A stretch of DNA of 63,984 nucleotides, the filler included, from Octopus bimaculoides (Eukaryota), in assembly GCF_001194135.2 (NCBI RefSeq). It is 5 parts of 5 records of this genome, joined end to end, with 100 filler letters (N's around TTAATTAATTAA, not from the genome) between each part and the next. Parts side by side here need not be neighbours in the genome. Positions count along the whole stretch, not along the records: positions 21,779 to 32,826 come from NC_068997.1; 4 more parts are not named here. One strand, given 5' to 3'. Both the position numbers and the translations under genes were made by a program. Under the pieces are notes generated by a model that was not told the DNA's origin, made no database searches, and saw only the letters and a list, made by a program, of their open reading frames with translations. This document shows positions 32,273 through 32,366 of the stretch, in pieces; within the stretch, counting starts at the first letter, position 1, and each line of letters begins with the position of its first letter.

Positions 32273-32366
32273 TGCCCCAGGTGAGGATCGAACTCACGAC
32301 CTTCAGATACCTCTGCTTTGTTACTTGATTATGAGACTGACGCGCTGCCTACTGCGCTACCGAGGC
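32273..32366 (-). tRNA. tRNA-Met-CAT: Elongator tRNA-Met (CAT) with a 21-nt intron (32309-32329)
   Basis: Minus strand reads GCCTCGG TA GCGC AGTAGGCA GCGC G TCAGT CT CAT A [ATCAAGTAACAAAGCAGAGGT] A TCTGA AGGTC GTGAG TTCGATC CTCAC CTGGGGC A. All four stems pair, A and B boxes are intact, the U31-U39 pair is typical of eukaryotic elongator Met, and 73 nt + 21 nt intron = 94 nt. Confidence 0.95.

What the first reader, a model, noticed from the sequence alone, without database searches (positions are those of the whole stretch)
32273..32366. Intron-containing elongator tRNA-Met in an animal genome
Seen: a complete tRNA-Met(CAT) with a 21-nt insertion one base 3' of the anticodon. The anticodon-intron pair needed by the TSEN endonuclease is present (C32 with the third-last intron G), extended by U33-A and C34-G, and a T9 terminator follows, so it looks functional rather than SINE-like. 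Established: in vertebrates and Drosophila, tRNA introns are essentially limited to Tyr-GTA, Ile-TAT, Leu-CAA and (vertebrates) Arg-TCT, whereas an intron in elongator Met is typical of land plants. Inference: a lineage-specific intron gain, and a possible source of a circular tRNA-intron RNA. I cannot say whether this is already recorded for molluscs.
Basis: partly seen in the sequence, partly recalled or inferred. Interest (0 to 1): 0.75.

Follow-up and report, generated by a model that had tools for sequence, protein, structure and literature searches.

The report
Ordinary intron-bearing elongator tRNA-Met gene
The sequence is a real, intact-looking methionine tRNA gene interrupted by a standard 21-base tRNA intron, and the same design occurs in corals and many other marine animals, so it is a widespread feature rather than a one-lineage oddity.

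Summary
Window 32273-32366, minus strand, is a complete elongator tRNA-Met(CAT) gene. It scores 52 bits in Rfam tRNA (E 5e-9). It carries a 21-nt insert at the canonical 37/38 position, has the C32:G(-3) anticodon-intron pair extended by U33:A and C34:G, and is followed by a T9 run.

The "lineage-specific gain" reading is not supported. One pattern scan of metagenome contigs hit its 120-locus limit and returned 132 eMet genes with an insert at the same site. About 100 of them have animal-type exons 0-8 nt from this one.

Across 76 unique introns the interior is free but the ends are fixed: AUC at +1 to +3 and GAG at -5 to -3. The window's intron has both. One exon group is scleractinian coral. 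A chromosome of Oculina patagonica carries the gene with a 14-nt intron, and the intron persists at the same locus in genomes whose neighbouring protein is only 47-52% identical. Another group lies beside a Gfi-1-type gene, which marks it as animal. In these loci no elongator Met gene lacks the insert.

I could not verify that the window is molluscan, and I could not examine any mollusc tRNA set. Splicing is inferred, not shown. Verdict: an ordinary member of a known kind, of modest interest.

The parts
32273..32366 (-). Whole elongator tRNA-Met(CAT) gene, 94 nt including the intron
   Evidence: Rfam tRNA 52 bits, E 4.8e-9.
32330..32366 (-). 5' exon, tRNA positions 1-37. It includes the A box TAGCGCAGTAGG at 32348-32359 and the anticodon CAT at 32331-32333.
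   Evidence: Read. Identical to the 5' exon of 14 environmental genes.
32309..32329 (-). 21-nt intron ATCAAGTAACAAAGCAGAGGT at the canonical 37/38 position
   Evidence: ARAGORN. It carries both conserved end motifs of the class, AUC at +1 to +3 and GAG at -5 to -3.
32311..32313 (-). Intron bases G(-5) A(-4) G(-3), which pair with C34, U33 and C32 (window 32333-32335) to form the anticodon-intron helix
   Evidence: The constrained fold contains these pairs and a 3-nt bulge at the 3' splice site. G(-3) is present in 75 of 76 unique introns.
32273..32308 (-). 3' exon, tRNA positions 38-73. It includes the B box AGTTCGATCC at about 32284-32294.
   Evidence: Identical to a copy in L014.
32262..32270 (-). 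T9 run, a candidate RNA polymerase III terminator, 2 nt after the discriminator base
   Evidence: Read. Comparable T4-T9 runs follow the related genes.

Best explanation
This is a working nuclear gene for elongator tRNA-Met. RNA polymerase III would transcribe it from its internal A and B boxes and stop at the T9 run. The 21-nt intron sits one base 3' of the anticodon. Its GAG near the 3' end pairs with C32-U33-C34 of the anticodon loop, which places the 3' cut in a 3-nt bulge and the 5' cut six bases after C32. That is the geometry the eukaryotic tRNA splicing endonuclease (TSEN) measures. An RtcB-type ligase would then join the halves to give CUCAUAAUCUGA, releasing the intron as a linear or circular molecule.

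The gene belongs to a widespread class of animal eMet genes that all carry a short intron with fixed ends (AUC...GAGNN) and a free interior. It is not a private invention of one lineage.

Shown: the gene anatomy, the pairing potential, the recurrence and end-conservation of the design, and its retention at a syntenic coral locus. Inferred: transcription, splicing, ligation and the fate of the intron.
For: - **Gene calls:** Rfam and ARAGORN identify it. The 52-bit score is in line with the 51.5-57 bits of the other intron-bearing eMet genes.
- **Fold:** the canonical pre-tRNA fold is as stable as the minimum free energy fold.
- **Fit to the published splicing rules:** the Drosophila/human rules require a C-G proximal pair, an invariant 3-nt bulge, and 6 nt from the paired C to the end of the exon (PMC6614914). 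All three are met.
- **Recurrence:** the metagenome scan returned 132 eMet genes with an insert at this site in 120 loci, and the limit was reached. Of these, 98 complete genes are within 8 nt of the window's exons. One has identical exons, and 11 differ by 1 nt.
- **Conserved ends:** in 76 unique introns, +1 is A in 76, +2 is U in 75, +3 is C in 70, -3 is G in 75, -4 is A in 69 and -5 is G in 56. The interior is variable and 48% A. From the interior base composition, the chance of all six consensus bases is about 1.5e-4.
- **Pair in the fold:** C32:G(-3) appears in the constrained best fold of 33 of 76 real introns against 17 of 760 shuffled ones.
- **No intronless copies:** across about 100 animal-type loci every elongator Met gene has the insert (95 genes) and none is intronless. 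The 9 initiator Met genes are intronless. Tyr-GTA, Ile-TAT and Leu-CAA carry introns as expected for animals.
- **Retention at one coral locus:** L117, L121 (Oculina patagonica), L125 and L126 keep the gene beside the same ankyrin gene. Exons are identical and the 13-14 nt introns differ inside, while the ankyrin protein falls to 47-74% identity.
Against: No expression or splicing data exist for this locus or this species. The unconstrained minimum free energy fold does not show the anticodon arm, and the fold's z-score is only -0.98. The helix with the intron is only 3-4 bp. The source organism was not identified, and no other Met gene from its genome could be examined, so this copy might be a minority or silent copy there. 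The acceptor stem has G6.U67 where most relatives have G6-C67, although both copies in L014 share that feature.
Confidence: 0.85

Rival explanations
1. The intron is a recent, lineage-specific gain in cephalopods or molluscs.
For: Vertebrates and Drosophila lack eMet introns. Humans have four spliced tRNA species (PMC12168002), and Drosophila has 16 intronic tRNA genes, of which the papers read here name Tyr-GUA and Leu-CAA genes (PMC6614914; PMC4536317). The interior of the window's intron is not alignable with any other intron found. tRNA introns can be gained (PMC4090602).
Against: The same insert position and the same end motifs occur in corals and in at least seven other animal-type exon groups. 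The closest environmental copies share the first 6 bases, ATCAAR, and the GAG end (L049/L123 ATCAAATCACAAGAGCG and L089 ATCAAGATACGCTGGGCG). Independent gain in each lineage at the same site with the same ends is less economical than inheritance, although shared functional constraint could imitate it.
Confidence: 0.1
2. It is a dead tRNA-derived repeat or pseudogene whose anticodon loop happens to hold a 21-nt insertion. It is never spliced.
For: The piece is full of SINE-like repeats and microsatellites. They include tRNA-Arg-like segments at 28303-28392 and 29585-29660 and repeat family D5, one copy of which lies 90 nt downstream of the gene. Genome-wide copy number could not be checked.
Against: Every stem pairs and the conserved tRNA bases are present. 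The exons are identical or nearly so to many independent genes. The insert obeys all six conserved end positions of the class. A T9 run follows at once rather than a SINE body. There is no second copy in the piece.
Confidence: 0.05

Closest known systems
Plant nuclear elongator tRNA-Met introns
   Same: Same tRNA species and same canonical position. The intron is short, with a conserved GAG(T) near its 3' end that can pair with C32-U33-C34. All angiosperm genomes surveyed have it (PMC11700998).
   Different: Plant introns begin with GCT and average 11-14 nt. The animal-type class found here begins with AUC and runs 13-24 nt, with 21 nt in the window. The exon sequences are of the animal type. 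Whether the plant and animal introns are homologous is unknown.
Canonical metazoan tRNA introns (Tyr-GUA, Ile-UAU, Leu-CAA; Arg-UCU in vertebrates), cut by TSEN and joined by RtcB
   Same: Position 37/38, a C-G proximal base pair, a 3-nt bulge at the 3' splice site, and 6 nt from the paired C to the end of the 5' exon (PMC6614914). All are present here.
   Different: The host tRNA is elongator Met, which is intronless in the model animals. Cleavage by TSEN has not been tested for this substrate.
Coral eMet genes found here (L117, L121 Oculina patagonica, L125, L126, and the Ga0126336-43 contigs)
   Same: Exons differ from the window's by 3 nt. The intron is at the same site, starts with AUC, and has G at -3 and A at -4.
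   Different: These introns are 13-14 nt, not 21, and read ATCTGA..(T/A)(C/A)AGA(A/C). The -5 base is usually not G, so the helix with the anticodon loop is 2 bp. The intron mimics both strands of the anticodon stem.
tRNA intronic circular RNAs (tricRNAs)
   Same: They arise from this kind of intron in flies and worms, and tricRNAs as short as 20 nt are mentioned (PMC4536317).
   Different: There is no evidence of circularisation here. It cannot be tested from DNA.

Membership tests
Eukaryotic nuclear elongator tRNA-Met gene | tRNA cloverleaf scoring above the curated threshold | tested here: met
   Rfam RF00005 gives 52 bits against a gathering score of 29. ARAGORN draws a cloverleaf with all four stems paired.
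Eukaryotic nuclear elongator tRNA-Met gene | Anticodon CAT, and elongator rather than initiator identity | tested here: met
   CAT is at positions 34-36. The gene has G1-C72, T54 and anticodon stem UCAG(U). The initiator genes found in related loci have A1-T72, GGG/CCC in the anticodon stem and an ATCGAAACC T-loop. The rule for telling the two apart comes from established knowledge.
Eukaryotic nuclear elongator tRNA-Met gene | Internal Pol III A and B boxes and a downstream oligo-T terminator | tested here: met
   TAGCGCAGTAGG, AGTTCGATCC and T9 were read directly. The consensus sequences come from established knowledge.
Eukaryotic nuclear elongator tRNA-Met gene | Transcribed, processed and aminoacylated | not testable with these tools
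   No RNA data are available.
Canonical protein-spliced tRNA intron (TSEN substrate) | Insert one base 3' of the anticodon (37/38) | tested here: met
   ARAGORN reports 'Intron Insertion Position(37-38)'. The position is formally ambiguous by up to 3 nt because of the ATC/ATC repeat.
Canonical protein-spliced tRNA intron (TSEN substrate) | Proximal (anticodon-intron) base pair C32:G(-3), a 3-nt bulge holding the 3' cut, and 6 nt from C32 to the exon end | tested here: met
   Constrained fold. The rules are from PMC6614914.
Canonical protein-spliced tRNA intron (TSEN substrate) | Actually cleaved and ligated | not testable with these tools
   Only indirect evidence exists: every elongator Met gene in about 100 related loci carries the insert, so those organisms must splice it.
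Animal eMet-intron class (defined here) | AUC at intron +1 to +3 and GAG at -5 to -3, length 13-24 nt, animal-type eMet exons | tested here: met
   The window's intron is ATC...GAGGT, 21 nt. Class profile, exon distances.
tRNA-derived SINE or tRNA pseudogene | Degenerate cloverleaf, a SINE body or tail after the tRNA part, and many decayed copies | tested here: not met
   The cloverleaf is intact, T9 follows directly, and there is no second copy in the piece. Genome-wide copy number was not testable.
tricRNA source | Circular intron junction reads | not testable with these tools
   This needs RNA-seq.

The most novel reading that the evidence does not exclude
The elongator tRNA-Met intron is an old animal feature, possibly older and shared with plants, fungi and red algae. 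It is kept in cnidarians and many marine invertebrates, including this genome, and was lost in vertebrates and in the fly and worm models. Its fixed ends (AUC, which copies positions 38-40, and GAG, which pairs with C32-U33-C34) persist because some step acting on the unspliced anticodon loop needs them, for example an intron-dependent modification of C34 or A37.
Probability: 0.3. Interest if true: 0.5.

Novelty: new member of a known kind. Interest (0 to 1): 0.3.

Why it matters
Taken alone, the locus is a routine tRNA gene. The comparison has some value: the textbook list of intron-bearing animal tRNAs (Tyr, Ile-UAU, Leu-CAA, Arg-UCU) comes from vertebrates and flies, and the one survey I found treats the tM(CAU) intron as kingdom-specific (PMC12168002). 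If that holds genome-wide, these animals depend on tRNA splicing for every internal methionine codon. The eMet intron would then join the Tyr, Ile and Leu introns as a candidate for an intron-dependent modification. I found no open paper that describes this, though tRNAscan-based databases probably already list such genes.

Tried and rejected
- **Default ARAGORN:** Rerun with -i.
- **Unconstrained folding:** uninformative, z-score -0.98.
- **Weak Rfam miRNA hits:** these are TA/CA microsatellites and were ignored.
- **Identifying the source organism:** there are no real coding ORFs in the piece. Three window ORFs are not on record. No flank similarity to any fetched locus. The organism stays unverified.
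- **Antisense-ORF search for further copies:** translating the strand opposite the tRNA gave only one hit, P0001, from NCBI assembly GCA_041443025.1. It reads as another eMet-like gene with an insert of about 24 nt, but no DNA could be fetched and the organism is unknown.
- **Literature look-ups of metagenome and assembly identifiers:** nothing found.
- **One broad literature query:** swamped by unrelated papers.
- **Reaching mollusc DNA through Gfi homologues:** Mya arenaria is not on record, and the 40-kb Pinctada imbricata locus has no tRNA.
- **Pocillopora verrucosa locus L122:** no tRNA within 10 kb.
- **GTDB scan:** one contaminant contig in a SUP05 bin, L123, host unknown.
- **Supplement of PMC12168002:** not held.
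- **My recollections of what the JGI sample codes stand for** (gutless worms, corals, Porphyra): leads only, not used as evidence.
- **Custom covariance model:** I considered building one and dropped it, because exon identity would make the score uninformative.

Full report
**What is at the coordinates**

The finding's span, window 32273-32366, holds a tRNA gene on the minus strand. Rfam's tRNA model matches it end to end at 52.0 bits (gathering score 29, E 4.8e-9). It is the only match above threshold in the 11,048-base piece. The packaged ARAGORN run reported nothing because it does not allow introns. Run with introns allowed, ARAGORN calls tRNA-Met(cat) with a 21-nt intron, ATCAAGTAACAAAGCAGAGGT, between positions 37 and 38.

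In window coordinates:
- 5' exon: 32330-32366
- intron: 32309-32329
- 3' exon: 32273-32308
- anticodon: 32331-32333
- T9 run: 32262-32270, two bases past the discriminator

All four stems pair. The acceptor stem has two G.U pairs, 4-69 and 6-67.

The gene is an elongator, not an initiator. It has G1-C72, T54 and a UCAG anticodon stem. Initiator genes seen later in related loci read AGCAG...GGGCCCATAACCC...ATCGAAACC.

**Splice signals**

The third-last intron base G pairs with C32. The next two, A and G, pair with U33 and C34. With the cloverleaf enforced, the best fold contains this helix plus U31-G(-2), and leaves U(-1), A38 and U39 as a 3-nt bulge holding the 3' cut. That fold has -25.8 kcal/mol, level with the unconstrained minimum of -25.9. 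The unconstrained fold alone is uninformative (z-score -0.98).

Work on Drosophila and human reporters gives these rules for metazoan tRNA introns: a C-G proximal pair, an invariant 3-nt bulge at the intron/3'-exon cut, six bases from the paired C to the end of the 5' exon, and a helix that is neither unpaired nor too strong (PMC6614914). All are met here.

The insert could therefore be drawn at any of four adjacent positions and give the same product.

**Surroundings**

The piece contains 3,847 N in six gaps. The rest is TA, CA and GATA microsatellite plus SINE-like repeats, with no credible protein-coding ORF. Low-threshold ARAGORN picks out tRNA-Arg-like segments at 28303-28392 and 29585-29660, probably the heads of tRNA-derived SINEs. 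A copy of repeat family D5 lies about 90 nt downstream of the gene, but the T9 run separates it from the tRNA transcript.

I could not identify the organism. Three window ORFs are not on record, and no fetched locus shares the flanks.

**Related sequences**

A scan of metagenome contigs for GCGTCAGTCTCATA, 5-35 bases, ATCTGRAGGTCG stopped at its 120-locus limit with 132 matches. Ninety-eight complete genes have exons within 8 nt of the window's. One copy in L014 is identical in both exons, and 11 differ by one base. They fall into about eight exon groups, each with its own family of introns 13-24 nt long.

In 76 unique introns the interior is free (48% A), but the ends are fixed:
- +1 is A in 76 of 76
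- +2 is U in 75
- +3 is C in 70
- -3 is G in 75
- -4 is A in 69
- -5 is G in 56

The window's intron carries all six consensus bases. From the interior composition, the chance of that is about 1.5e-4. The C32:G(-3) pair appears in the constrained best fold of 33 of 76 real introns, against 17 of 760 shuffled ones. Rfam scores of these genes, 51.5-57 bits, bracket the window's 52.

Run over roughly 100 animal-type loci, ARAGORN finds 95 elongator Met genes, all with the insert, and none without. It also finds 9 intronless initiator Met genes. Introns occur in all Tyr-GTA (8), Ile-TAT (4) and Leu-CAA (2) genes, the usual animal set. The loci were chosen for holding at least one intron-bearing copy. 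The second copies in multi-copy loci are the less biased sample, and they all carry introns too.

**Who carries them**

Locus L117, from the group with 13-14 nt introns, encodes a 599-residue ankyrin ORF. Its named relatives are Oculina patagonica (74% identity over the full length) and Pocillopora verrucosa, so the group is scleractinian coral.

Fetching the Oculina gene from NCBI chromosome CM126636.1 brought in, about 1.5 kb away, an eMet gene with a 14-nt intron ATCTGAAATCAGAC and a T8 run. Two further genomes, whose ankyrin proteins are 52% and 47% identical to L117's, keep the tRNA at the same place. Their exons are identical and their introns read ATCTGTCGAAAGAC and ATCTGATTAAGAC. The intron has thus been kept at one locus over a long divergence while its interior changed.

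Locus L017, from another exon group, carries an exon whose zinc fingers match Gfi-1 best among solved structures. All its named homologues are animal Gfi-1, Gfi-1b, senseless or pag-3 proteins. It is an animal contig, but the phylum is undetermined.

A contaminant contig in a SUP05 bacterial bin (L123) and L049 carry the intron closest to the window's, ATCAAATCACAAGAGCG. Their host is unknown.

The scan also hit non-animal groups: fungus- or protist-like exons, plant-like exons with 35-nt introns ending in GAGCC or GAGCA, and a red-alga-like group.

**What is known**

Plants carry an eMet intron in every genome surveyed. It is 11-14 nt on average, starts with GCT and has GAGT near its end (PMC11700998). 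A 2025 survey of 576 eukaryotic genomes describes the tM(CAU) intron as following a kingdom-specific pattern, and says no earlier systematic discussion of which tRNAs carry introns was known to its authors (PMC12168002). Gain and loss of tRNA introns both occur, and the genes for one isodecoder in a genome tend to be all intron-bearing or all intronless (PMC4090602). That agrees with what the loci here show. I found no open paper on tRNA introns in cephalopods or Nematostella.

**Interpretation**

The best-supported reading is an ordinary, functional elongator tRNA-Met gene with a canonical intron. It would be transcribed by Pol III, cut by TSEN through the ruler-plus-proximal-pair mechanism, and rejoined by RtcB. 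It belongs to a widespread animal class.

Recurrence of the same site and the same end motifs from corals to this genome argues for inheritance or a strong shared constraint.

A pseudogene or SINE reading is unlikely, given the intact exons, the rule-abiding intron and the immediate terminator.

The circular-intron idea is reasonable, since tricRNAs as short as 20 nt are mentioned in PMC4536317, but it is untested.

**What remains open**

- The source species.
- Whether all its eMet genes carry the intron.
- Direct evidence for molluscs or any other lophotrochozoan.
- Why the intron's first three bases copy positions 38-40.

**Score**

This is a new member of a known kind. The locus itself is of low interest. 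The comparative pattern is a modest but real gap in the literature.

Noticed in passing
L004, L012, L036, L055, L069, L088, L092, L098, L102, L113, L114: These are elongator tRNA-Met genes with a GTCCTTG acceptor strand (three G.U pairs). They carry the canonical 15-17 nt intron and, in addition, an insert of about 10 nt inside the T-loop (GGGTTCGAG[TGTATCGGCC]ACCCCAC), which makes two introns. This resembles the non-canonical introns reported for red algae and nucleomorphs (PMC4090602).
   Followed up: partly
L010, L016, L018, L019, L086, L103, L033, L064, L079: In these loci the intron-bearing elongator tRNA-Met gene lies in the same short contig as an intronless initiator tRNA-Met gene, mostly within 0.3-1.4 kb. 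The pairing recurs in two different exon groups.
   Followed up: no
L117, L121, L125, L126 and the Ga0126336-43 loci: Coral eMet introns read ATCTGA..TCAGA(A/C). The 5' part copies the 3' strand of the anticodon stem, and the 3' part nearly copies its 5' strand (UCAGA against UCAGU). This suggests origin by local duplication or an alternative pairing.
   Followed up: partly
window 28303-28392 (+) and 29585-29660 (-): Low-threshold ARAGORN reports tRNA-Arg-like segments that are not real tRNA genes. They are probably the heads of tRNA-derived SINEs. A related repeat family (D5) has copies at 30682, 30883 and 32134.
   Followed up: partly
window 32650-32732 and 32744-32826: An exact 83-nt direct duplication, 94 nt apart, runs to the edge of the piece. 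Each copy is a (TA)n stretch followed by GGTGCTCCAACATGACCGCAGTCGCATGGCAGAAACGAGTAAAAGAGTAAAAGAGTA.
   Followed up: no
L014 (Ga0233405_10001936), 2.5 kb: A cluster of five tRNA genes on one strand. It includes two intron-bearing eMet genes; one has exons identical to the window's, including the rare G6.U67, and the other shares the G6.U67 variant. It is the closest relative found, and its organism is unknown.
   Followed up: partly
P0001 (NCBI assembly GCA_041443025.1, 571-bp contig): A called 82-residue 'protein' is the antisense reading of another eMet-like gene with an insert of about 24 nt at the same site. The DNA could not be fetched and the organism is unknown.
   Followed up: partly
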